Source: Oikopleura dioica (taxonomy: Eukaryota > Animalia > Chordata). Taken from it: a DNA stretch of 64,000 bases. Under the pieces are notes generated by a model, which worked only from the letters and a program-made list of their open reading frames with translations, was not told the origin of the DNA and did no database searches. The DNA lies in NCBI GenBank assembly GCA_907165135.1, contig OU015569.1, positions 7,006,001-7,070,000 on the forward strand. Reading direction: 5' to 3'. Below, in pieces: positions 12,443 to 41,700 of the stretch (its first letter is position 1; every line of letters begins with the position of its first letter). The position numbers and the translations under genes were made by a program.

Positions 12443-12878
12443 GAAAATAGACTCAGACGACCCTGCCGCCGCCTGCGGAACGCTTCATCCTCAACACTGC
12501 CTGTTTCCTTCCTACTCTAGAATTTTGCTTTGATAGCATAATTTATTTCTACTGTTTTTTTACTTCGAATTTATTTACTTCTTGGCCGACCCTACGGTGA
12601 TCGCAGTACAGCAAGTAAAAGTGTATAAACTGAATTCAACTGATTTTCAATCAAAGCACAACTAAACAGACACTTATTTACAAACGAGTTTATTCTTTTA
12701 TGCCAGAGCAACTCACGGATTGATTTCGCTATACGAAGTATTCGAGCATCAAAGCCAAATCACAGCATTGAGCATTTACAAAGTTTAGTCATATTACAAA
12801 TTTTTGTTCGTTTTTTTCCTTGAACCAACAAAGACGGATTACACATTGTCGCGTATTCAAAAAAATCAAGCACGAATA

Positions 12879-13589
12879 ATGGGCATCCAAGGGAAAATCG
12901 AAAATCTTACAGAAGAACAGATCAAGAGAATAACATGCTCAGTGTGTTTGGAGATATATGAAGAACCGGTGGAAGTTGCATGTTGCAGACAGGTTTTTTG
13001 CAAGGTCTGCCTTTTAAAATTTAAGTATTAGGCAAATCAAGCTTTAAGAAATGTATTTTGGCTGTATCTGGTAACAAGGGGAATAGCTGCCCAATTTGCA
13101 GGGAAAATCTCGACATCAAAAGATTAACAAAAGCACATCCTTTTATCTTGGAGCATTTGTCCACTGTCGAAATGAAGTGTCCTTTTCCAGAGTGCCCAGG
13201 TAAAATGAATTTTAAACTCTGAAATTTTTATAATAGTCAAACTTTATGAGATCATAATGTTTCAGAATCAAACACATACGAAGCGCATATTAACCACATC
13301 AGCAGCTGTTCGAGAGGACCTGACAGTGTGTGCAACTCGTGCAATCAAAATGTCCCACGATTGGATTTTGATGATCACCTGGAAAACTGTCTTCAAAGGT
13401 TCTCCCAGGCATTAATTATTAAAACTCACTAACTTCGCAAGATACAAAGAGCTGGTAAAGAAAGCCGAATACATGATCACAAAGCTTCGCATGGAAAATC
13501 GACATCTAAGAGAGAAGCTTACAAACGCAGAAAGACGTGCCAGTATGAACCAAACAAGCAATTATTATGCACCGCATATGCTCGAATAA
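12879..13589 (+). CDS. RING finger + TRAF-type zinc fingers + coiled coil (RNF41/RNF151-like E3 ligase), 4 exons
   Basis: Spliced translation gives CSVCLEIYEEPVEVACCRQVFCKKC...CPICR, then MKCPFPECP...HINHISSC and CNSC...DHLENC, then a coiled-coil tail. GT-AG introns; AATAAA overlaps the stop. Confidence 0.8.
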
Positions 13590-13767
13590 AAGAAAAAAGT
13601 TAAGAACAATCTTTGTGTAATTTTTTATTAGGTCATATTTTGAAAAATTCAGTGAAGAGGGTAGTGAAAAGTAGGCTCGCAATAATAAGATGTGAAGTTT
13701 TCTTATCCGGAAAGGTCTCAGCACACGCTAGAATATGACATAACAAAATCAAATGTCGAACCTAAAC

Positions 13768-14551
13768 TTACATGATCGATCTTGATGCTGGTTGGTTGTT
13801 GTTTGACTCCGTCGATAGAAGAGCTTTGATCAGCTGTTTCTCCAGAAAGACACGAGTAGACTAAAATATTCAACATCGATTATTTCACGAAAACCATACA
13901 AATGTTAAGGAGAAAGAACGATGAAAGAACTTCCTGAGATTCTTAAGAAGCACGAAGTCAGACATTCGGATGACCGTATCTCGGATTACTTTCTCTTCGC
14001 GAAAGCGGCGATATACTTTTGATCTTCCCATCTTCTTGTAGAACTCGGACTCATCCAAATACTCGTCTGCAAATGAAAGAGGACGGGCATTCACTTTGTT
14101 TAAGATTTCATCTTTTTAGGGGATTTGAATTTTTGGAAATGAAAATCTCAAACGAACTCAGCTATTTAGATCATTTGAATTCCCTCGCAAAGGCCTGCTC
14201 AAACTTCTTCATCCTTCGGTTTTTCTTTTCGATCATTCTAGCGGCGCTGTCTGACTCGCGTCGCGCATCATGTTCGTTAGCTTCGCGCTTTTCCTCACTT
14301 TCTAACCGGATCTCCGCTGAACAAGTACTCATTAATGTCTGATAGACTGTAGGTCTACTAGACGGAAGACCTGCGCTAGGAATTCCGCCTGTGATTGGAT
14401 CAAAGATCACCTGTTACGCGGTGAAACTCCTCCAATGAGAAGGTAGTTGATCGCGGACGAGGAACTGGCGGCACAACTCTTGAATTTCGAGTAAATTGAC
14501 ATTTTCGATTCGATTTTTCAGAGCTTACCTTAGCTTTTGATCGCTCTTCAT
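13768..14551 (-). CDS. Hypothetical charged/coiled-coil protein, ~5 exons
   Basis: MKSDQKLR|VVPPVPRPRSTTFSLEEFHRVT|VYQTLMSTCSAEIRLESEEKREAN... joined by GT-AG introns; ORFs 14171-14410 and 13885-14094. No recognisable domain; 3' end uncertain. Confidence 0.5.
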
Positions 14552-15441
14552 GGTCACGGAACGAGGACGAACTGGCGAGAAGGTTCTAAACTTTCTAAGA
14601 GAAACAAAAATGCAGAAAGAAGTTGGCGCTTTTGCACCACGTGAGGGCACGAGAACGAATGAGGCACTAAGGAGCACTTTTCAGTGTCACAGAAAGAAAT
14701 TAGTAAAGCTGAGATAGAGAAGCAAAAGAAGAAAATTTGAGCTTACTAAGAGTAGAAGAAAGATAAATGCGCAAGGGCTGTGAGTCGGTCCCTCGCACAT
14801 GCAACTTTCTTCAACCTTTTGGTTTGAGACACTCGACGCGTGAAATCGTTTCCACTTTCCTACAGATTTTTCATGGGGGTTTAATGCGAAAAAAGCCTCG
14901 CTTTCATCGTTTAGAAATGGATTTTACCTGTTTCGAACTGTAGCCGTCTTCGACGAAATGTCAGTCTCCCTGGTTCTCAAAACGCTCTTTCCCATCTTAT
15001 AATTTTTACTTTGATTCGCAGAAGGAAACGAAGCCTATTTGCTACACCTGCTTCTCTCACTCAAAACCACGACATTTTTGAATTGACCAATTAGATTTAA
15101 AAATAAAGTCAGAATAACACGAATACATTAAAATTTGATATGCTTAAACTGACCTTGATATTGATGATATAACCGGGAATAATATGAGTAAGAAGTGGCC
15201 GCATTATTTGAACCTGACATTTTTGCGATTGACATTTGCTCCATTAGATGGAATTATGATTTTTCTGCAGCAGATTCGTTGAAAACTGGACGTTCGATCT
15301 GAATATGTATTCAGTGGCATTAAGAAAATGATTTTCCTTTCCCCAATTTATTTCACTGGCAATCGTAAAGATTCATTCACATAAAAATCAGAGAGAGCGA
15401 AAGCTTCAGCCGGTTGATCAACGAACAAAAGTTGGACAACG

Positions 15442-18400
15442 ATGGCGACGAACTCGCTCTTGCTGTTTTTGACGATACTAATCGGCAAAAACGCCGCGCA
15501 AAATTCCAGCAGAAAAGATGTCACAATTAAAGGGCAAGAGTTTACCGTTTTTCGTAAGAGATCGACTTGGGAAGACGCAGCACTCCTTTGCGCCGAAAAT
15601 GGTCTACAATTAGCGACGGTGAACAGTGCCTTCGAAGCAGCACGTCTTCAGACCATCGCCGGAACTTATACTTGGATCGGGCTCAAGTCGAACAATGCGG
15701 CTGCAGGACCCTGGCGATGGATTCATGGAGAAGTCGCCGAACGCGCAGATGTCTCGTGGGGACGTATTCAGCCTAATGAGAGAGCACAAGAAGCATGTGG
15801 CTATATCGCTACCAGCTCTGGAATCATTGGCGATACAACTTGCGAAAAGCGCTACATGGTCGCTTGCTCCCCCAATCAGTCACTCTCTCGAATGATTTTC
15901 GAAGAAACCACCAGCACAGAATTGCCAACGACCACTACTCCAGAGGCGACTACGTCTCTGCCACCTACGACGAGCACGACTACAACGGTGAAAATCCCCA
16001 TCGAGCAATTGCCAGCCGCCACATTTGGAAAGAATCTGGATCTCTCTGGTGCTGGACACCGCGGGCGAGTTCGAGATCCTCTCGTCTCTTTCCCTGGTCC
16101 CGTTGATGACTCGGCGACGAACAGAGAGGTTTTCGTTAACTACGACACTAATGGCGACACAATTACAGGATTCAGTGATACTATTGATCCAGAGATCGAG
16201 TACGTTGAAGCCGATGGAGTTTTTATGTTTTATCTCGATTACATGCAAAATCCAGAGGAGCATTGCAACAGTGACTGGCCTAACGATCTGACTCAGCAGC
16301 CGATGGGACTTGACAGTTGCTTAGATACTGATCCCCTCGTGCAACCCGATCCTTTCCCCGATACTGGTTACCACGAGTTCTCTCCCGAATGTCATGGAAC
16401 ACCTGGTGACTGCACTGCCAGTGATACCTGCTGCAACGTTCATCGAGGCATGAACTGGACCCGAGCAGTCTGCAAGTGCCGTGAATATGGAGGCGAAATC
16501 GCAACCCCGTACAGCGCAGTTCAGGATCAATATATGTACGATTTCATTCAGTCTATCTGGGAATATCGGTTCAATAGAAACAACTCACGGTACTGCCGTG
16601 ACGAGAACGGAGATACTCCCGGTACACTTGGAACAGATGATTGTCCGATCGTCCAAGAAGGTCTCACAACTGCCACCTGGGGTAATGAACTAATTTGGAT
16701 CGGTTACAACTTTGACCCTACAAACAATAAATACCAACTTGTTAATGGTACATTGATGAATCTCGATTATCACTACTGGGGTCTTATTGGAACTGGTATT
16801 GATGGCAGAAAGAGACGTGCTCTTGATGATATCAATATAGTAAGCCCTCAGCAAACTATCATCACCATCGATAATAGCCATATTAATGGCGGATCAGATA
16901 TCATTCTTGATTACGATGAATTGGGCACAGACCCCATTTGCATCGCTATAAGATACGACGTTGACGACCAAGATCCTACCGCGCCTCACAAATTGCAATG
17001 GATGGAACGTGATTGTGGTCGAGCAAAGTCCGTCATGTGTGAAGTAGATTTCCGTGAAACCCAGAATTGCCGTTTCGGAAATATTCCTATGAATCATCCA
17101 GACTACGACGAACTCACTAAGATTACAACAGATGCCTGGTCAGCAGCACCAGATCCCTGCACAAACTGGCAAAAGTGTGAGGGGGGTGAAATCGTCAATG
17201 GTACTTGTGCAATTAACGAAAAATTTGACACAGTCCTTCGAATGTGTATGCCTGCAATTACTCAGGAGCCTTGCAACATCAACGAGTGTAATGTAACCAA
17301 TCATGTCTGCACCGGGGACAATATGCATTGCGAGGATACAATTGGATCGTATGCCTGTATTTGCGATCCTGGATATCAGTGGAATCCAGAAAAAGCTTCT
17401 GTTACTGACGCATTGAATCCAAATGGACGAGAACCTTCTCCAGATAACAATTTCTGGGTTTGGCCAGTTGGAAGTGACCCATCAGATCCAAGTTATGTTC
17501 ATGACGATAGTGGACTCTACGATCCAAACCAGGGTGACATGTGTATTGATCTCGATGAATGTTTTGTGAATGAATTTACTTGTCCCGCCAATTCTGAGTG
17601 CAGCAATCTGGATATAGTCACCACTGGACGACCGTATGAATGCGTTTGCTCTAATGGCTACGTTCCTGTGTATAATATGACACAAAATACGACCGACGCG
17701 AACGGAGTCAACTACTACGACGTCGTTTCGTGTGAAGATGTTAATGAGTGCGATTGGGGCAATGTAACATGCTCTGCTGTCACGATGTGCGTCAACACTG
17801 ATGGAAGCTTCCACTGTGGCTGTGAAGTTGGATACACCACTGATCCCGCCTGCAACGCATGCATCGGAAACGCAACAGCTGATGGATTCGCCACAGACGC
17901 CAATCTGTGCTCTGCAGAAACAGCAGCCGCTGGAATCTCCAATTGCTGCGGCAATATCAATGAATGTGAAGATCCAGTCCTCAATCTTTGTCCAGTCAAC
18001 TCAGACTGTATCGATAACGATGGAAGCTTCTTTTGCGACTGCCATAATGACCTTGAATACATTAATACTGACAATTATGTTTGCGAAGACAAGGATGAGT
18101 GCAGCAACGCCACGTGGAACGGATGCGATCCAAATTCTGTCTGTCAAAATTTGGACCCAAGCTACATCTGCAATTGTAACCCCGGTTACGATAATTGCGC
18201 GAATCCTTTCCAAGAAATTTCTGGCACTTGCTGTGAAGATCGCAATGAATGCGAAAAAGACGCACCTTGTGGTATAAACGCCGACTGTACCAACTTAGTA
18301 GGACTTCATACTATTTGGGGCGATGATCTTATTGAGCGACTTATCGGATATTACTGTAACTGCTCGGATGGTTTCGCGGGCGAAGCTTACAATGCATGTT

Positions 18401-32201: not shown

Positions 32202-33880
32202 ATGAGTGAGTGGCAATTCACACGAAGGAAAAGAAAGTGGGGACGAACGCTTCGAACAGGTAAAAATTCAATGGAACGGCTAGAGTGTAAAGAGTTAATT
32301 TCCCAAAGTTGTTGTCGTCTCCAATATACTCTTCTGGTTCGTTGGATGTGGCATTTTATCACTCGGAGTATGGATGAGATTTATTCAAGGTCCAGTCAAG
32401 GAGCGGACGCAATATTTTTAACTTCTCAAGGCACGTGGTCCAATCATTGGACCACGGCCACTTTTACCCCCTGTATTTCCCGTTTTAGTAATCTGTTTGA
32501 CCTGAAATTTGTAATGTGAGCTGATAGGACGAAAACGAACCACTCTGTGAAGTTTCGAATGAAAACTCAAAAGTGGTGGCGTTTTGCGCCATATTTCTCT
32601 TTCGCTCTCTGGTGGAATATCGAAACGGATTTTTCGATTTTCAATTGTTTATTTTTATAGAAGAGGGTTCAAGCTCTCTAACAATATATTTATAATCTTT
32701 TTTACACAACGGAAACGCCAATTAGAGCCAAAAGTTCTGAGCGCTATTTTTCACACTATGAATTTGGCGCGCCGCGCGGGGCTGGATAATGCATTGTGGT
32801 CCAATTATTGGACCCCGTGTTTTGAGGGTATAGTAGCGCGCCCGTGTTTTGAGAAGTTAATGTATTTGCTAACTTATCTTTCTTCCAAAGAAACAGCTTT
32901 AAATTATTAATAGTGGTCACGGTAAAACAGATTCAGACACGAGGCGATTACAATTTGTCAAAATCTACAATGAGACAGATTTTATTGAGTCCAAAACGTA
33001 GGATTACTTTCTCGAATACCAAGACTTGCGCGTGGCCTTGGCGTTGATCCTGGCTTCTGGGATTTTATTTCTCGTCCTGTCACTCGTAGGCACCTGCGGT
33101 GCGAATATGAAAAATGAAGGCATGGGGTTTTTAAGTGATTTTGACGATTATCGTCACTGTATTACAGTTGGATTAGCCTCGAGATCGCTAAAATGATCCC
33201 GTTGAAAAGTACTCCTCAGTCTTTACACGATAACAATGGCGATTCTATGCACATGCGAAATAATCTCGATCTTCGTCTTTATTGCACAGAAAAAGGACGA
33301 CTTGCTGCAGTCCTTTGGCAACTGGTACAACACAGAGGTCTTTATGCGGCTAGACCAGACGAAAGCACCGACAGTTTGGCAAAAGAACAGGAAGATTGTT
33401 GAGCACGTTCAAGAAGCTCTCCACTGCTGCGGTCTCCAGTCCGACTCCGATTTTCAGGAATATCACGTCGTGTCCGCCAAAGACGCCGAGCAGCTTAGAG
33501 CCACTTGCATTCTCAAAAATGGGAACCGCGACGGGGAGATTCAGGTAAATTAAAACATGCTCTGATTCGGAGCATTCAATGTTTTCGCTTATTGTCTTGC
33601 CTTTTAATTAGACATCGTTTTTGCTCTGAAAATAAGATCGAAAAGTGATTTCATGTAGAGTCTTTATTATAGACAATTAATTAATTTGATTTTGTTGCAT
33701 AATTTATGTATGAATTATTCAGCGGCCGGAGTTTTACAAAGATGGCTGTTTCAATGCACTCATCTCAGAAGGAGAAAAGTTCATTACATATCTGTGGATT
33801 ATATCTCCAATCGTCATATTTAACCAGTTGGTCGCCCTTGTCAGCACGATCCTCTTTGTCATTTACTTGATAAAAGGTGG
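32202..33880 (+). CDS. Tetraspanin module (4 TM), continuing in frame into the PDZ array
   Basis: NILFWFVGCGILSLGVW (TM1); LSLVGTCGANMKNE (TM2); TCEIISIFVF (TM3); LHCCG in EC2; GCF; TM4 IVIFNQLVALVSTILFVIYL. No stop codon after TM4. Confidence 0.85.
32422..32856. mobile_element. TTAA-flanked MITE (piggyBac-like ends) in tetraspanin intron
   Basis: TTAA|CTTCTCAAGGCACG ... CGTGTTTTGAGAAG|TTAA; palindrome GTGGTCCAAT(C/T)ATTGGACC near both ends. Confidence 0.7.
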
Positions 33881-36800
33881 CAAATACGACGACGATGACG
33901 AGGATTGCTCCGCTCTTGTAGATCAGCTGGATACGATGTCGATTAAGTCTTTCCAAGACTACTCCCGCAAATTTCAAGAGGGAGAACAGCTGCCAAAGCC
34001 AAAAGTCTTCCGGATAGTGAAAAATCTCGTATTCCTACGTTTGGGATAGGACTCGAGTACAACGAGGAGCGTAAAGGTGTCATAGTTCAAGCAATCGACC
34101 CCGATTCGAATGCAGAATACGCCGGCCTGACCGTGAATGCGCGGATTATCGAGATTAATGGTCTTGTTGCGCAGGGCTCAACAATCGAGGAAGTCAAATT
34201 CAAAATCGACGCTGCATTAACCGAAATTAAAATCCTGGTGGTTGAAGAAAAAGCAGACGCGATTTATAGGGAGTGCAAAGTTGCGGTCAATTTGAGAAAC
34301 GTTGAAGGAGTCACTGGCGACGAGAACGACTATAAGCCGAGATTGGTAAAACTGGAACGGTCTGACTTGAGCGAGGGCTACGGATTCAATCTGCTGTACT
34401 TGGACGACAGAAAAGGCGAGTACATCGAAGAAGTTCAGCCAAGGGGACTTGCCGATCGTGCCGGGCTAAAAGTTGGTGATCGAATCATTGAAGTGAATGG
34501 AACTAACATCGAGACCTTCAAATCGAGAGAAGTGGTCAGCCGCATACGCATGGCCGAGTTCTCCGTGACAATGCTTTTGGTTGACCCAAAAACAGACGGC
34601 TACTTTCGCAAGAAAGCGGTTACAATCACGTCTTCCCTCGCTGAAGAATTCTTCGACGAAAGAGTCGGCAAAGTGCGAAAAGGCAAAGCGAAGAAGGATA
34701 AGGTATTCTTAAACCAGTTTTTACATCGGTAATGGCATTCTTTGTAGACACATATCAAACCTCGTTATTGCCGATTGGTGAAAGCGCACAAAGAGGATTA
34801 TGGCCTTTATGTTGTCATAGATAATAATCGTATTGGACAAGTCGTCCGATGGGTCGACTGTGGTGGCCCAGCTGACCGAGCAGGATTAAGGAGAGTGGAC
34901 ACTATTTTTGATATTCTATCACATTGATTCTCAGGGTACTTTCGCAAGTATAGCACATTTTCAAACGAAAATTGCGTTATTATAACATTAACAAGCTGTT
35001 CACTCTACGCGTCAGAATAGGAGACAGAATAATTGAAGTAAATGGTATTAACTGCGAGTACGAGACACATCAGCGACTTGTTGCCACCATAAAGGTTACT
35101 GGTTCATAATTAATGTTCGATCGAGCAAATAAGCCCTTTAAACACTACTAAAGCAATTTTCACTTGAAAGATTCATTTGATCGGAAATAGTTATGAACCA
35201 AGGACTAGGCTGGCAAAAATATTTGTCACTTTATCGTCGTCGATGAAGATTATGACAGGCAGTACAAGCGCGGCAAGCCTAGGCTCTGCAGAATTTTTAA
35301 AGAAGATGGCGCTTTTGGCTTCTGCGTATGTTACGATGACGAAAAAGACGGCCATTATGTTGAAGAAGTAGATCCAGGAGGACCTGCAGAGCGCGCAGGA
35401 CTAAAGACAGGCGATCGCGTTATCCAAATTAATGGGATGAACATTGAAGCAGATGACCATGAAGACTGTATTCAACGCTTGCGTATGTGCGAAGTCGAAG
35501 TACTGCTTCTTGTGACTGACGCGAAGGTAATTATTGGCTTTTGAACTCGAGCTCCAGGCATTTTTGTAGGCGGATACACATTACAAGAACATCGTTGACT
35601 TCAAAATCAAAGGGATGGAACAGATCGACTGGGATGCGATCTCGATTCCGGCTGAGCCATATTTCATGCCTTTGGATTCTGACGCAGAAACAGAGCTGCA
35701 AGAAGACGACACAATAACGTTGGGAATGTCAGACTCGATCTCACTCTCTGAAACAAAATCATTCACAACATTTACATCGGAAGGAACTCTTCGCGGAGAT
35801 CTTCAACGCTCGACACACGCTCTCGGCGTACCTCGTAATTGTACTTTGTTGAAGACCGACCACGAACAACATGGATTCTTCCTTGCTATTGATCGAGACA
35901 GAAATGGACAGGTCATCCGGAGAGTAGAGAAAGGTGGCCCCGCTGACTCGGCTGGTCTTAGGGATGGAGATAGAATCATTGAAGGTAAGGAAAACATATT
36001 TAGGCCTTCTTTAAATAAGCAAAAATAAGTGAATGGTATCAACTGCGAGCGATACTCCCACGAGCAGGTCGTCGACTTGATAAAGAAAGCAGGAAACGAA
36101 ATAAGGTTCCTTGTGATTGATGAAAGATCTGACGACGTCAAAGCGAAAAATAAGCCATATCTTTTCCGCATTGTCCAGGTACCGAGTTGATTCTGAACAT
36201 ACTAGCCATAATTATTTGACAGGGAAAATCTGGATATGGTTTCTATATCTGGCACGACGATGACGGACATTATGTGGAAGATATCACAATAGGCTCACCA
36301 GCCGATAGAGCTGGTCTTCGAGCGGGTAATTTTATTTTGACATTTCCGATAATTCAAATCGACTTTAGGTGATAGAATTATCGAAATTAACAACGTCAAC
36401 ATTGAAAAAGAATCCACCGAAGATGTTTTTACCGAATCAAGGTATGAATCGAGTTCTCTATCTTTATTAAGAATTTTTAGGCTTGTCACAATGTGGTTAA
36501 TTTGTTAGCAGTTGATGCCAAAACTTTCGTCTACTACAAGAAAAACAATATCGGCATCACCGCTTACAAGGCTGATATGAAGTTTTCTGGTTGGAAAGGC
36601 TGGGGCGGGTTCGACAGAGGAGGAAACGCCCAGGGAATCGATGAGAATAGCAAGACAATTTCAGGAACGGTCAATTGAAATCTTGAGTTATTGAAAGAAA
36701 AATTATAAAAATCTTATTAATTTATCTTATGAGTTATGTCTTGACGTGTTTTTCGACCAATATAAAGCGCAATCTACGTTCATACTGTCAAAAGACGATG

Positions 36801-38436
36801 ACGAAGACTGGGGCTTCAAACTTGCAAATACAACATCATTCAACATCGATTCAAATGAAAAGAAAATCGGTCACAATATTCATTGGGTCGAGAAAGGCGG
36901 CCCCGCCGAGTACGCGGGTCTTCGTGATGGCGACAGACTACTTGCTGTTGAAGACGTTGATGTGACGGACTACGCCCACGAAGAGGTTATTGCCTTGCTT
37001 GAGAAAGCGCAAGAGGCGTGTGAAGTCAAGTTACTCGTTCAATACACTGAGTCTATTGATGCTTACACTCCGCACGATGTCGAAATGGTTAAGAAGCCCG
37101 GCGAGACCTTTGGTTTCCATCTCTGGTTCGACGACCAAGGGCACTATGTCGAAGATGTTACAATTGGCTCCATTGCAGATAAAGCCGGTCTTAAAGTGGG
37201 CGATCGTGTGAAAGAAGTCAACCACAGAAACATCGAGCTCGAGATACACGAAAACTGTGTCTCCCGAGTTCGTGAAAGTGGCGACACTGTTCACTTGAAC
37301 GTCATGTCCGTCCAGGCGGATCAGCTTCGCGAAGTTGTTACCCCTAGACGAGTCCTCCTGACTAAAGAAAAGGGAACGTTCGGATTCTACATCAACCAAG
37401 ATGACAAAGGACACTATTTTGAGCTCGTTCAGGAAGGGATTGAACAAAAAATAAATGAAATTATTGTAGAAAAAGAATTATCAAGACAAAACAAAATTTT
37501 ATTAAGATAAAATTGTTCAATCTCTTTCCAGGCTGGCTTAGCTGCAGACAAAGCTGGAGTATCTACTGGTGATCGTTTGATTGAAATTGGTCGTGTTTCT
37601 CTCGAAGGACAAAATCATGACTTTGTCGTGAATAAAATCAAATCTGCTGGAGAAAGTATAGAAATCACCATCCTTTCGACTCGAAAAGAACTGCCGCAAA
37701 TGCAAGCCGACGAGTTGTTGGAAGACTCGCCGATTTTCGCTCAGCTTCTTGGAAAAGAAAAGATTGATTACAAGGTGGCTCCAAGAATGTTCCAAAATAG
37801 ACGACGCAGAGGAAAGCAAGAAAAGAGAGGAACGAATTTTAATAATCCTTCAAAGGCTAAAGCCGAAGGAGAAGGTAAGAGGAAGCCATTAATGTCTCTA
37901 CAAAACAACCTTAGGTGATGCGGAAAGCACTGAAGGAGACAAAAATAAGCTTCGAAAGCGCAAGAAAAACGCGACGGAAAGAAAGTCAAATTCGATGCCG
38001 GCGAGGATAATGTAGCTTTCGAAATCGACGACGAGGAGAAAAAGAAACGCAAAAAGAGGCGCAAGAAAAAGGAAGCTGTCGGAGATGATAAGGACAAATT
38101 ATCAGATGATGACGAACAGAAGAAACAACGTCGTAAGCGAAAACAACGACGAGATGAACCCGTTAACGACGAAGAAAAAATCGAAAGACATAAAGGTGAG
38201 ACAAGAACTAAAATCGTTGTTTGTAAAAAAAAATCTCAGCTCTGCGGAAGAAAACAAACGCTGCCCGTAAAGGTCTTTTGATGGACGGCAAAAAGTCCTC
38301 ACGAAAGCTTGAAAAGACCCAAGCTGGAGATTCAAAGCAAAAATGGGACTGGGAAATGGATCAGGACACTAAACTCGGTGCCATTGCCGAAGAAGCCGAA
38401 GCCGAGGCACCTGTTGGTCAGCTCGTTGATTACTAA
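33881..38436 (+). CDS. Nine NHERF/PDZK1-type PDZ domains plus Lys/Arg/Glu-rich tail (C-terminal part of the tetraspanin gene)
   Basis: Nine repeats with P-R-x-C/V-x-L...[YF]G[FL]...GGPA-x2-AGL-x2-GDR-I-I-E-V-N-G patterns across multiple exons; stop TAA at 38434-38436. Apparent 1-nt deletions at ~34020-34024 and ~36426-36430. Confidence 0.85.
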
Positions 38437-38736: not shown

Positions 38737-41700
38737 ATGACTTTATCTGAAGAAGATATAAGAGAGGGACTGGCCAATCTCTGCAAACCTTTACCTACAG
38801 GACTACTGGAACAAATTAACATATTTAAACAAATAATTTCAATCTTCTATTTCTTCGAAAAATTTGACAGAGAATCAGCACGCAAAATATTAAGAGATGT
38901 TTAAGGGTATAGTTATCGCTCAGGCCTACTTTGAGCTTGAACTCCTCTGGACTTGTAAATAGTGAGAATGTCCTTAAGTGCTAGAATTTAAGATCTATCT
39001 TAGATCTTACTATTGACAAGAGCTTTTTAAAAAATTCCTTCATTTTTGCCACGTGACGACCCCTCAAAGTTGGCATCTCGGCCAAAATAGGCTATATAAA
39101 CGGCCGAACTCCTCGAAATTTTACAAAAAAGTCCAGAATCTTTTTAAGTGGATTATGTAGGTCAGACCCTTATCTTAAAATTGACAAGAGCTTTTTTCAA
39201 TTACTAAATTTTTTCTTATAAAAATTTTTCGAAAATCGATTGAACCTATTTTTGACCTAAACAATCTCCTAAATTACCCTGAGGGCACTGCCCAAACTTA
39301 ACCGTTTTTATACCAGTTTGAAGCCCTAAGCATAAGCTTTCAAAAAATGTGTCATATGAAGCCCTTCTGAAGCTTCTTAAAATGGCCAAAATTTGGCTTA
39401 TGGGCAAAATGCATTAAAATTCGCCATTTTCAGTCTCAATTTCCGGAAAACCGGTTGAGATAGAGATAAAGGTCATGACTCATGAGGACTTTTTTGTTCA
39501 GAATTTCATGAGGATTCTAAAAATGGACTCAGATTAAAAATTTGAGACTTGGCAAAGAGCGATGACTATACCCTTAAATCAAGTGTAAAAGTTTCTAGGA
39601 TGCTCAGTTTTTGATCCACGAAAGAATTACCCGATCATCCGGGTTTGGACGAAAATGTTCCACACGCACCGAAGAGGGTTCATGGATTAGACTCAGAAGA
39701 AATACAACAAGCAATTTCTAATGCACTGCGATACTTTGATCGCGAAAGTCATGACCAATTACAGAAGGAGTTTCTTGAGGAGCTGAATGATTATGGGCAC
39801 ATCTACATGTACCGTTTTAGGCCGACTCGGATCCCTATCAAAGCTTATCCGGTTAATTTGTATCCATGCAAAACGAAGCAAGCTGCTTGCATGATGCACC
39901 AGATAATGAATAACTTAGGTAAGCAAGAAGTTTTAACGTCGAACAAAGAAATAGTTCATTTGTCACCTTAGTTCTGCGGTCAAATCGCTCGTTAAAGTTC
40001 GTATATGTAAAAGATTCTCGGCCTAATTCCAATAAAATTGTTATACTACTCTTGACGCAACCTTATTTCAGATTATGCCATCGCCCAATACCCGAACGAG
40101 CTCGTAACTTATGGAGGAAATGGACAGGTTAACCAGGGTCAAATAATATTCTATATTACATGTTTAGTGTTTCTGCTATTCTTGCGACCAAATGAGTTGT
40201 GTTTAGGTCTTTTCGAACTGGATTCAATTCCGGTTAACGATGTATTACTTGTCGATAATGAATGAAGAACAGACTCTTGTGATGAACTCCGGCCATCCGC
40301 TTGGCCTTTTTCCGAGTTCTAGAAATAGTCCGAGATGTATCATTACCAACGGAATGATGATTCCACGATTCTCGACGCCATCACAGTATCAAAATCCTTC
40401 GCGCTCGGAGTAACACAATACGGACAGATGACGGCTGGATCTTGGTGTTATATTGGTCCTCAAGCTATGGTGTGAGAGTCTTATTTTAAGGGTAATCCTA
40501 TACATCGGCGCGGCGCTGCTCGATCGATCCGCGCTCCGCCAGAACCTATTTTTCACTAGGCCATAGAATTCGACCGGAGTGAGATTTTTTTAAAATTCAA
40601 AAAGATTCGTAATCTTTAAACTCTCTTCTATTGCTCTAGCAAAAATGAAAAAAATCGGGAACGAGGAACTATCTGAAAACCGTCGGTTTCCTTCAAAGGA
40701 CATTTCCCGCCAGATTTTTCATTCAAATTTCACGAAAATCAGATGGTCTTGTAGAAAATCGTCTGCTCTACAATTCCTCTGATTTAGATTTTCCTTTAAC
40801 GTTCTCAAAAATTCTCGATGATAGTTTGAAGAGAGTGCTATTCTTCTCTGCCGGAGCGCGCCGTGAGAAATAGGAAGAAGAGAGGCGCGAGGAAGCATAG
40901 CGCTGTTTTAAAATGACCATGTAAAATAATTGAGAGCGCAAAAAGAAAATCTAAATCAGAGGAATTGTAGAGCAGACGATTCTCTACAAGACCATCTGAT
41001 TTTCGTGAAATTTGAATCAAAAATCTGGCGGGAAATGTCCTTTGAAGGAAACCGGCGGTTTTCAGATAGTTCCTCGTTCCCGATTTTTTCATTTTTGCTA
41101 GAGCAATAGAAGAGAGTTTAAGGATTCCGGTCGAATTTTATGGCCTTGTGAAAAATAGGTTCTGGCGGAGCGCGGATCGAGAGAGAAGCGCCACGCCGAT
41201 GTATAGGATTACCCTTAAATGCTCTCAATGCCTTACGTTTTACATCATTTAAAAAGGAATTGTACATGGAACAACACTGACCGTTCTTAACGCCTTTCGG
41301 AGGAAGTTTGACTCGTCCAATGGCGCAGGTCGAGTGTTCATCACCTCTGGACTTGGTGGTATGAGCGGTGCCCAAGCAAAGGCTGCCACAATTTGTGGCT
41401 GCGTTGGAGTTATCGCAGAGATCGACAAAAGTCATTTGATCAAACGCCAGAAACAAGGATGGCTCGATATTTACACAGATGATGTTGATGAAATCATCTC
41501 CTAATTCGACATTATCGCGAGGAAAAAGAGCCACTTCGATAGGCATTGGGTTCATATTTGCCTGTGGAAAATGATGCTTTCTAAAAGCTTCTTTCAAAGT
41601 TTATCTTAAAATAATGAATGAACCAAAAAAGGCTACCACGGAAATATAGTTCGTTTGTGGGAGAAGGTGGTGGAAGTTTACGAGAAAACTGGCGAGCTCC

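What the first reader, a model, noticed from the sequence alone, without database searches (positions are those of the whole stretch)
32202..38436. Tetraspanin fused to nine NHERF/PDZK1-type PDZ domains
Seen: within one exon (from 33723) TM4 continues with no stop through ...YLIKGGKYDDDDEDCS...EGEQLPKPKVFRIVK, the first strand of PDZ1. Adding one A to the A5 run at 34020-34024 gives KKSRIPTFGIGLEY...AGLTVNARIIEING. Eight more PDZs and a charged tail follow. Known: tetraspanins normally have very short cytoplasmic tails and recruit PDZ proteins in trans, and NHERF/PDZK1 proteins are soluble with 2-4 PDZs. I know of no described tetraspanin-multi-PDZ architecture. Inference: a ~1,500-aa self-anchored membrane scaffold that hard-wires tetraspanin microdomains to transporter or channel clustering.
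Basis: partly seen in the sequence, partly recalled or inferred. Interest (0 to 1): 0.85.

Follow-up and report, generated by a model that had tools for sequence, protein, structure and literature searches.

The report
Tetraspanin fused to nine PDZ domains
In the planktonic tunicate Oikopleura and its relatives, one gene joins a four-pass membrane organiser (a tetraspanin) to a chain of nine protein-gripping PDZ domains, hard-wiring two protein types that in vertebrates are separate and only bind each other.

Summary
Confirmed. The A5 at 34020-34024 is an assembly error: contigs from three runs (two DNA, one spliced) read A6. One 4,747-nt spliced contig runs from the tetraspanin exons through the PDZ exons. 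With three read-supported single-base additions the 17 exons give one 1,511-aa frame: 4 TM helices with a CCG/4-Cys loop, a 41-aa linker, nine NHERF/PDZK1-type PDZ domains and a charged tail. An intronless wild contig encodes the whole protein (1,512 aa, 96% identical). The genome (size and annotation fit Okinawan Oikopleura dioica) has two more fused paralogs; the scan noted both before (s1-326465, s1-543367). Homologs occur in other oikopleurid-like and Fritillaria-like contigs. An intron-rich animal contig, probably an ascidian (unverified), has tetraspanin plus PDZ1-2 only. The fusion sits unnamed in automatic UniProt/NCBI entries; I found no paper on it. Best reading: a self-anchored membrane scaffold that clusters transporters or channels by their C-termini. 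Ligands, tissue and location are inferred, not shown.

The parts
32202..38436 (+). Whole coding region, 17 exons: 32202-32259, 32309-32400, 33002-33119, 33210-33544, 33723-34702, 34748-34890, 35016-35094, 35209-35526, 35570-35984, 36030-36178, 36223-36325, 36369-36441, 36481-36664, 36768-37432, 37532-37874, 37915-38195, 38240-38436; 1,511 aa
   Evidence: Joints and pieces of spliced contig X4 record 17 fix introns 1-14; the last two introns rest on splice signals and on the 96% near-gapless match to L024
32202..32259 (+). Exon 1: start codon and 19-aa basic cytoplasmic N-tail
   Evidence: Same N-terminus in L024, L025, L015/P0035; intron 1 seen in X4 and X17
32250..33869 (+). Tetraspanin domain (aa 17-250): TM1 aa 20-38, TM2 61-79, TM3 97-115, TM4 231-249; large loop with CCG (33425-33433) and two more Cys
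   Evidence: Hydropathy and Cys list; Pfam PF00335 on exons and on L024/P0059; fold of a homolog's domain matches CD9, CD53, CD81
33870..33992 (+). 41-aa acidic, probably disordered linker between TM4 and PDZ1, inside one exon
   Evidence: pLDDT under 50 in the ortholog model
34020..34024 (+). A5 run, an assembly undercall of A6
   Evidence: Extra A in X1, X3 and X4; in-frame KKSR in orthologs L007, L024, P0019, P0020, P0061
33993..34249 (+). PDZ1 (aa 292-377); no His at helix-B position 1
34331..34588 (+). PDZ2 (aa 405-490); best solved relative NHERF1 PDZ1; no His at helix-B position 1
   Evidence: (E 1e-18)
34754..35244 (+). PDZ3 (aa 531-614, three exons); the most conserved domain, 80-99% across homologs and the PAR paralog
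35272..35523 (+). PDZ4 (aa 624-707); best hit NHERF2 PDZ1
   Evidence: (E 1.9e-18)
35524..35824 (+). 86-aa acidic, Ser/Thr-rich spacer between PDZ4 and PDZ5
   Evidence: conserved at 91-93% with the adjoining PDZ5 half in L015/L016
35825..36124 (+). PDZ5 (aa 794-878)
36149..36519 (+). PDZ6 (aa 887-968); holds the T-run undercall at about 36425
36773..37312 (+). PDZ7 (aa 1019-1110) and PDZ8 (aa 1116-1198)
37337..37681 (+). PDZ9 (aa 1207-1288)
37682..38433 (+). 223-aa charged tail (29% K+R, 22% D+E); holds the A-run undercall at about 37964
38341..38391 (+). Conserved tail motif pair: W-[DE]-W-E, then ten residues on L-x-x-I-x-E followed by acidic residues (fits the PP2A-B56 docking consensus)
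   Evidence: Kept in L008, L015, L016 and the PAR paralog; only such motif in the protein; chance about 0.4% per 20-aa tail window; consensus from PMC10970375
32418..32860 (.). 439-bp MITE-like insertion in intron 2 with terminal inverted repeats, flanked by TTAA; polymorphic; not part of the protein
   Evidence: about 40 copies scored; absent from run X3

Best explanation
A real, spliced, conserved gene for a roughly 1,510-aa integral membrane protein: a complete tetraspanin whose fourth helix runs on into a cytoplasmic array of nine NHERF/PDZK1-type PDZ domains and a charged tail (shown; about 97% sure). Tetraspanin topology puts both termini, and so all PDZ domains, in the cytoplasm (inferred from the family fold). 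The tetraspanin part places the protein in tetraspanin-rich plasma-membrane patches. The PDZ array then grips the C-termini of several transporters, channels or receptors at once, as NHERF1-4 do, without needing to be recruited (inferred). Six domains (3, 4, 5, 7, 8, 9) keep the helix-B His that selects S/T-x-hydrophobic ends. PDZ1, 2 and 6 lack it and may take other ligands or serve as structural partners. PDZ3-6 are the conserved core. The tail motif may dock PP2A-B56 and so tie ligand release to dephosphorylation (motif-level inference). History (inferred): a tetraspanin fused to a duplicated NHERF-type gene; the array reached nine domains before oikopleurids and fritillariids split; O. dioica has three paralogs and keeps a soluble PDZK1-like gene.
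For: A6 in three runs and one spliced contig across the gene. One 1,511-aa frame. Intronless L024, 1,512 aa, 96%, with Pfam Tetraspanin plus 9 PDZ. Paralog L002 has tetraspanin and 5 PDZ in one stop-free 875-aa ORF; PAR paralog 1,496 aa. Continuous fused ORFs in P0005, P0020, P0038, P0041, P0042, L025, L029. Position-wise conservation: tetraspanin 38-61%, PDZ3 80-99%. NHERF-type PDB and Atlas hits. Vertebrate CD81 binds EBP50/NHERF1 and they colocalise on microvilli (PMC2610370), the same pairing in trans.
Against: No protein-level evidence, no ligand, no tissue or localisation data. The ERM-binding end of NHERF1/2 is absent (no EBP50_C hit), so an actin link is not shown. The only raw RNA reads laid (X17) came from a divergent lineage and did not cover the junction. 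Contigs are not single molecules. AlphaFold gives no fixed arrangement of tetraspanin and PDZ1-2 (pTM 0.37).
Confidence: 0.6

Rival explanations
1. Same fused protein, but it works on internal membranes (secretory granules, endosomes) as a sorting or transport adaptor for PDZ-ligand cargo, rather than as a resident plasma-membrane scaffold.
For: The conserved W-[DE]-W-E motif resembles W-acidic kinesin-light-chain motifs, and the L-V-[DES]-[LY] end resembles a clathrin box (both from memory; conservation shown). Some tetraspanins, such as CD63, traffic through adaptor complexes (PMC5390497).
Against: All PDZ domains tested are of the NHERF type, whose members act at apical membranes. The motifs are short and degenerate, and the terminal one differs in the PAR paralog.
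Confidence: 0.22
2. A cell-junction or adhesion scaffold, working like a four-pass junction protein plus a multi-PDZ protein (MPDZ/PATJ-like) in one chain.
For: Nine PDZ domains is the scale of junction scaffolds. Tetraspanins partner adhesion receptors (family knowledge).
Against: The PDZ domains are NHERF-type, not MPDZ-type. The genome has a separate MPDZ/PATJ-like gene at C4:6.81-6.83 Mb.
Confidence: 0.1
3. The long frame is a precursor or one isoform: cleavage in the acidic linker, or alternative transcripts, release a plain tetraspanin and a soluble PDZ protein.
For: The linker is exposed and probably disordered. Some orthologs have an intron in the linker (L007, L016).
Against: In this genome TM4, linker and PDZ1-2 share one exon. 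No alternative joint was listed in that exon. The short protein P0002 is a gene-caller read-through into an intron. The linker sequence varies between paralogs, with no shared cleavage site evident.
Confidence: 0.07
4. Two neighbouring genes (or a broken gene): A5 is real, the tetraspanin stops at 34049 and the PDZ part is separate.
For: The assembly as given stops at 34047-34049. Oikopleura has operons (from memory).
Against: A6 in all three runs that cover the place; in-frame fusion in orthologs and both paralogs.
Confidence: 0.01

Closest known systems
Tetraspanins (PF00335), 4-Cys type such as CD9, CD81, CD53, Tspan2
   Same: Four TM helices, small loop of about 22 aa, large loop of about 115 aa with CCG and four Cys, short N-tail; sequence and fold match CD9, CD53, CD81.
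   Different: C-terminal cytoplasmic part of about 1,260 aa instead of the typical 4-19 aa (PMC5390497). It carries PDZ domains rather than a PDZ-binding motif. No ordinary tetraspanin subfamily could be assigned.
NHERF family: NHERF1/EBP50, NHERF2, PDZK1/NHERF3, PDZD3/NHERF4
   Same: PDZ2, 4 and 8 hit NHERF1/2 and PDZK1 best; PDZ2 model superposes at 1.1-1.6 A on NHERF PDZ domains; Atlas features give PDZK1/NHERF3 clusters.
   Different: Nine domains instead of two or four; integral membrane anchor; no EBP50_C ERM-binding end; charged tail with W-[DE]-W-E and LxxIxE.
CD81-EBP50 complex (PMC2610370); CD63-syntenin (PMC5390497)
   Same: A tetraspanin C-terminus coupled to a PDZ scaffold; CD81 and EBP50 meet on microvilli.
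   Different: There the link is non-covalent and uses up one PDZ site; here it is covalent and leaves all nine free.
Automatic entries E4X9K0/CBY19129, E4Y229/CBY15923, CAG5090923 (PAR.g12771), CAG5098012 (XSR.g15330)
   Same: Same family; XSR.g15330 is this gene's public model and already joins tetraspanin and PDZ.
   Different: Unnamed or 'PDZ domain-containing protein'. XSR.g15330 is cut to 947 aa at the T-run error; E4Y229 lacks TM1-2 and is wrongly joined to the downstream urocanase gene.

Membership tests
Tetraspanin | Four transmembrane helices in 1-2-3, long loop, 4 spacing | tested here: met
   Four hydrophobic segments and no others in 1,511 aa; AlphaFold helices
Tetraspanin | CCG motif and 4-8 Cys in the large extracellular loop | tested here: met
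   Cys 162, 163, 189, 210; invariant across homologs (the distant paralog L002 has CCF)
Tetraspanin | Pfam PF00335 above the curated cut-off | tested here: met
   88.7 bits on L024 and 90.3 bits on P0059 against 32.1
Tetraspanin | Tetraspanin fold | tested here: met
   Model of homolog P0005's domain (pLDDT 80): top Foldseek hits CD9 (E 1.6e-7), CD53, Tspan15, CD81
Tetraspanin | Short cytoplasmic tails (typical, not absolute) | tested here: not met
   N-tail 19 aa fits; C-terminal part about 1,260 aa does not
Tetraspanin | Palmitoylation and lateral association into tetraspanin-enriched microdomains | not testable with these tools
   A conserved juxtamembrane Cys after TM2 (aa 82) is present; use not shown
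NHERF/PDZK1 | PDZ domains of the NHERF sequence type | tested here: met
   (PDZ2, 4, 8 directly; others by Pfam and mutual similarity)
NHERF/PDZK1 | Soluble protein with two or four PDZ domains | tested here: not met
   Nine PDZ domains behind four TM helices
NHERF/PDZK1 | C-terminal ERM-binding region (NHERF1/2) | tested here: not met
   No EBP50_C hit on L024, P0021 or the last exon at E up to 0.1
NHERF/PDZK1 | Intact carboxylate-binding loop and helix-B His for class I ligands | tested here: inconclusive
   Loop kept in all nine; His in PDZ3, 4, 5, 7, 8, 9 of the window, absent in 1, 2, 6; PDZ7 has Asn in L024
NHERF/PDZK1 | Binds C-termini of apical transporters, channels or GPCRs | not testable with these tools
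   Needs peptide-binding screens or pull-downs

The most novel reading that the evidence does not exclude
A tunicate-specific family of self-anchored membrane scaffolds. It arose as tetraspanin plus two PDZ domains in the tunicate ancestor (the intron-rich contigs L034-L041 being an ascidian), grew to nine domains and several paralogs in appendicularians, and builds patterned apical membrane domains, for example in the epithelium that secretes the house filters, by holding several transport or secretion proteins at fixed places under phosphatase control.
Probability: 0.25. Interest if true: 0.85.

Novelty: new variant of a known kind. Interest (0 to 1): 0.7.

Why it matters
Tetraspanins are known as short-tailed organisers that depend on cytoplasmic partners. 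This is a conserved natural fusion with the very scaffold type that binds CD81 in mammals, which supports a functional tetraspanin-NHERF link. It also gives a single gene in which membrane anchor, each PDZ domain and the tail can be removed one by one in a tractable chordate. PDZ3 is 80-99% conserved while the tetraspanin drifts to about 40%, which points to an old ligand that can be found. The work also corrects three frameshifting assembly errors and two wrong public gene models.

Tried and rejected
Real frameshift or two genes: rejected. An in-frame 33-nt intron at 34017-34049: rejected, it does not reach the PDZ frame and the spliced contig shows no joint there. P0002 as a natural short isoform: rejected, its end is intron read-through and the gene continues with the linker and PDZ1. 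A frameshift near 37795 suggested by an overlapping frame: rejected, no indel in the reads and L016 keeps the same frame. Other long open frames at tetraspanin hits (L003-L005) gave no PDZ. The multi-PDZ genes on C4 and C5 look MPDZ- and GRIP-like, not NHERF-like. The first tree had a wrong-frame L002 row; it was redone and does not resolve the paralog order. Three homolog searches and one all-representatives search found no named non-Oikopleura fusion; they are limited by length and word sharing, so this is not proof of absence. Four paper searches on tetraspanin with Oikopleura, tunicate or Ciona found no description. The host of L034-L041 could not be verified: the ids are not in the library and the likely source paper is not held. 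No exon continuing after PDZ2 was found in 8 kb downstream in L038.

Full report
Setting. The window is G000:C2:7006001-7070000 of a 64.28-Mb, 19-contig genome. A public model of this gene, Oidioi.mRNA.OKI2018_I69.XSR.g15330, lies on a contig of the same length as C2. So the genome is very likely the Okinawan Oikopleura dioica assembly and the gene lies in the X-specific region.

Observation. The exon that starts at 33723 encodes the end of the large loop, TM4, an acidic linker and the first strand of a PDZ domain; as assembled it stops at 34047-34049. Contigs of three runs carry one more A behind 34019: X1 (DNA, no other difference from the window, possibly the source sample), X3 (DNA, another study, 46 substitutions) and X4. 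X4 is labelled 'DNA?' but its record 17 (4,747 nt) skips every intron, so it is RNA-derived. It runs from the tetraspanin exons through the PDZ exons into the tail. The same table shows two further one-base shortfalls, a T behind 36425 and an A behind 37964 (X3 has a G two bases on). With the three additions, 17 exons give one frame of 1,511 aa with a single stop at 38434-38436; with only the first, the frame ends at aa 964. Four introns have GA donors and one a GC donor; all end in AG. Raw RNA reads of X17 come from a divergent lineage; they support introns 1 and 2 but do not cover the junction.

Independent confirmation. A JGI contig, L024, is intronless and encodes 1,512 aa at 96% identity, with the same first and last residues. 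Pfam finds Tetraspanin at 88.7 bits and nine PDZ stretches on it. CBY15923, a model from another O. dioica assembly, also reads through the junction. Exons were joined only inside scripts, for the frame check, coordinates, one pairwise comparison with L024 and rows of a local tree or domain table.

Anatomy. N-tail 19 aa; TM1-4 at aa 20-38, 61-79, 97-115 and 231-249, with no other hydrophobic segment; large loop with CCG and four Cys. A model of a homolog's tetraspanin part matches CD9, CD53, Tspan15 and CD81. A 41-aa linker leads to PDZ1-4, an 86-aa acidic spacer, PDZ5-9 and a 223-aa charged tail. PDZ2, 4 and 8 match NHERF1/2 and PDZK1 best among solved structures. All nine keep the carboxylate-binding loop; six keep the helix-B His. 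PDZ3 and 5 are 54% alike, PDZ4, 6 and 8 are 47-52% alike, which suggests growth by duplication of a PDZ pair (inference). The tail has no ERM-binding domain. It has a W-[DE]-W-E motif followed by L/M-x-x-I-x-E and acidic residues, kept in L008, L015, L016 and the PAR paralog. This fits the PP2A-B56 docking consensus (PMC10970375); binding is not shown.

Family. The genome holds two more fused genes: C1:15.214-15.218 Mb (PAR.g12771, 1,496 aa) and C2:3.203-3.207 Mb, where tetraspanin and five PDZ domains share one stop-free 875-aa ORF. A profile of the junction region finds only these three. A soluble PDZK1-like gene remains at C2:2.26 Mb. Marine contigs hold close orthologs (L007, L015, L016, L025: tetraspanin about 60%, PDZ3-6 88-99%) and homologs of the PAR paralog (L028, L029, P0017, P0018). 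A third group (L006, L008, L011, L012) has non-canonical introns. Two introns in L012 read AG...AT with a YAY triplet before the donor and at the acceptor, and one in L008 has the same YAY frame. That is the signature described for Fritillaria (PMC13326754). L008 has all nine PDZ domains in the same order. So the nine-domain form probably predates the oikopleurid-fritillariid split (inference from intron type, not from a taxon label).

An outlier. L034-L041 come from an intron-rich animal with GT-AG introns of 0.1-4 kb. Exons for TM1, TM2, TM3, the CCG loop, TM4, the acidic linker, PDZ1 and PDZ2 lie in order on one strand over 10 kb. Its PDZ1 and PDZ2 group with the fusion's PDZ1 and PDZ2 (100/100 and 100/99), apart from the soluble PDZK1-like domains. 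No PDZ3 exon follows in 8 kb, and a guanylate-cyclase gene converges from the other strand. It may be a two-PDZ form, or the gene may continue beyond the contig. From memory the JGI ids belong to metagenomes of the ascidian Ecteinascidia turbinata; I could not verify this, and no transcript shows that these exons are spliced together.

How it most likely works. Shown: one membrane protein frame with a tetraspanin and nine NHERF-type PDZ domains, transcribed, spliced and conserved. Inferred: the PDZ array faces the cytoplasm; the tetraspanin sets its place in the membrane; the array binds several membrane-protein C-termini at once; PDZ3-6 hold the oldest ligands; the tail may recruit a phosphatase. 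The precedent is CD81, whose tail binds EBP50/NHERF1 and which colocalises with it on microvilli (PMC2610370). I put the plasma-membrane scaffold reading at about 0.6, a trafficking adaptor at 0.22, a junction scaffold at 0.1, processing into two pieces at 0.07 and two separate genes at 0.01.

Known or new. It is a tetraspanin by fold, motif and Pfam score, with an atypical tail. It works like a NHERF protein but is not a member as defined: it is membrane-anchored, has nine domains and lacks the ERM-binding end. The architecture is present in automatic entries (E4X9K0, E4Y229, CAG5090923, CAG5098012) without a name. Paper searches found no description, within a library that lacks most subscription journals. 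Atlas clusters show the two parts only separately. The scan had already noted the two paralogs. Verdict: real; a new domain architecture built from two known families; function untested; interest 0.7.

Noticed in passing
window 32418-32860: 439-bp MITE-like element with terminal inverted repeats, TTAA-flanked, in intron 2; about 40 copies scored in the genome at 74-97%; absent from the haplotype in run X3.
   Followed up: partly
window 34020, 36425, 37964: Three one-base homopolymer undercalls in 4 kb of one gene; the public model XSR.g15330 is cut to 947 aa as a result. Other apparent frameshifts in this assembly deserve the same check.
   Followed up: yes
window 32401, 33120, 34891, 36665, 37433: Five of 16 introns have non-GT donors (four GA, one GC), fixed by a spliced contig.
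   Followed up: yes
window 39645-40400: Urocanase gene just downstream; CBY15923/E4Y229 wrongly joins it to the tetraspanin-PDZ gene.
   Followed up: partly
window 40485-41219 and 38900-39578: A large palindromic element (arms of 205, 94 and 46 nt, 89-96% complementary) and a second element with 22-nt terminal inverted repeats; both look like non-autonomous DNA transposons.
   Followed up: no
L020:2900-7300 (G000:C2:2.26 Mb): Soluble PDZK1-like gene with at least four PDZ domains and a Pro/Glu-rich repeat tail.
   Followed up: partly
P0009, P0043, L012:1900-2190: Some Fritillaria-like homologs have a long charged N-terminal extension (over 200 aa) before TM1, so both tails are long.
   Followed up: no
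L038:550-10330 and 12760-17840: Intron-rich homolog with tetraspanin plus PDZ1-2, followed by a convergent guanylate-cyclase gene; host probably an ascidian, not verified.
   Followed up: partly
L016:16066-22289; L015:8097-8885: Downstream neighbours of orthologs are a sodium-sulfate symporter family gene and a potassium-channel gene; neighbours differ between species, so probably chance.
   Followed up: no
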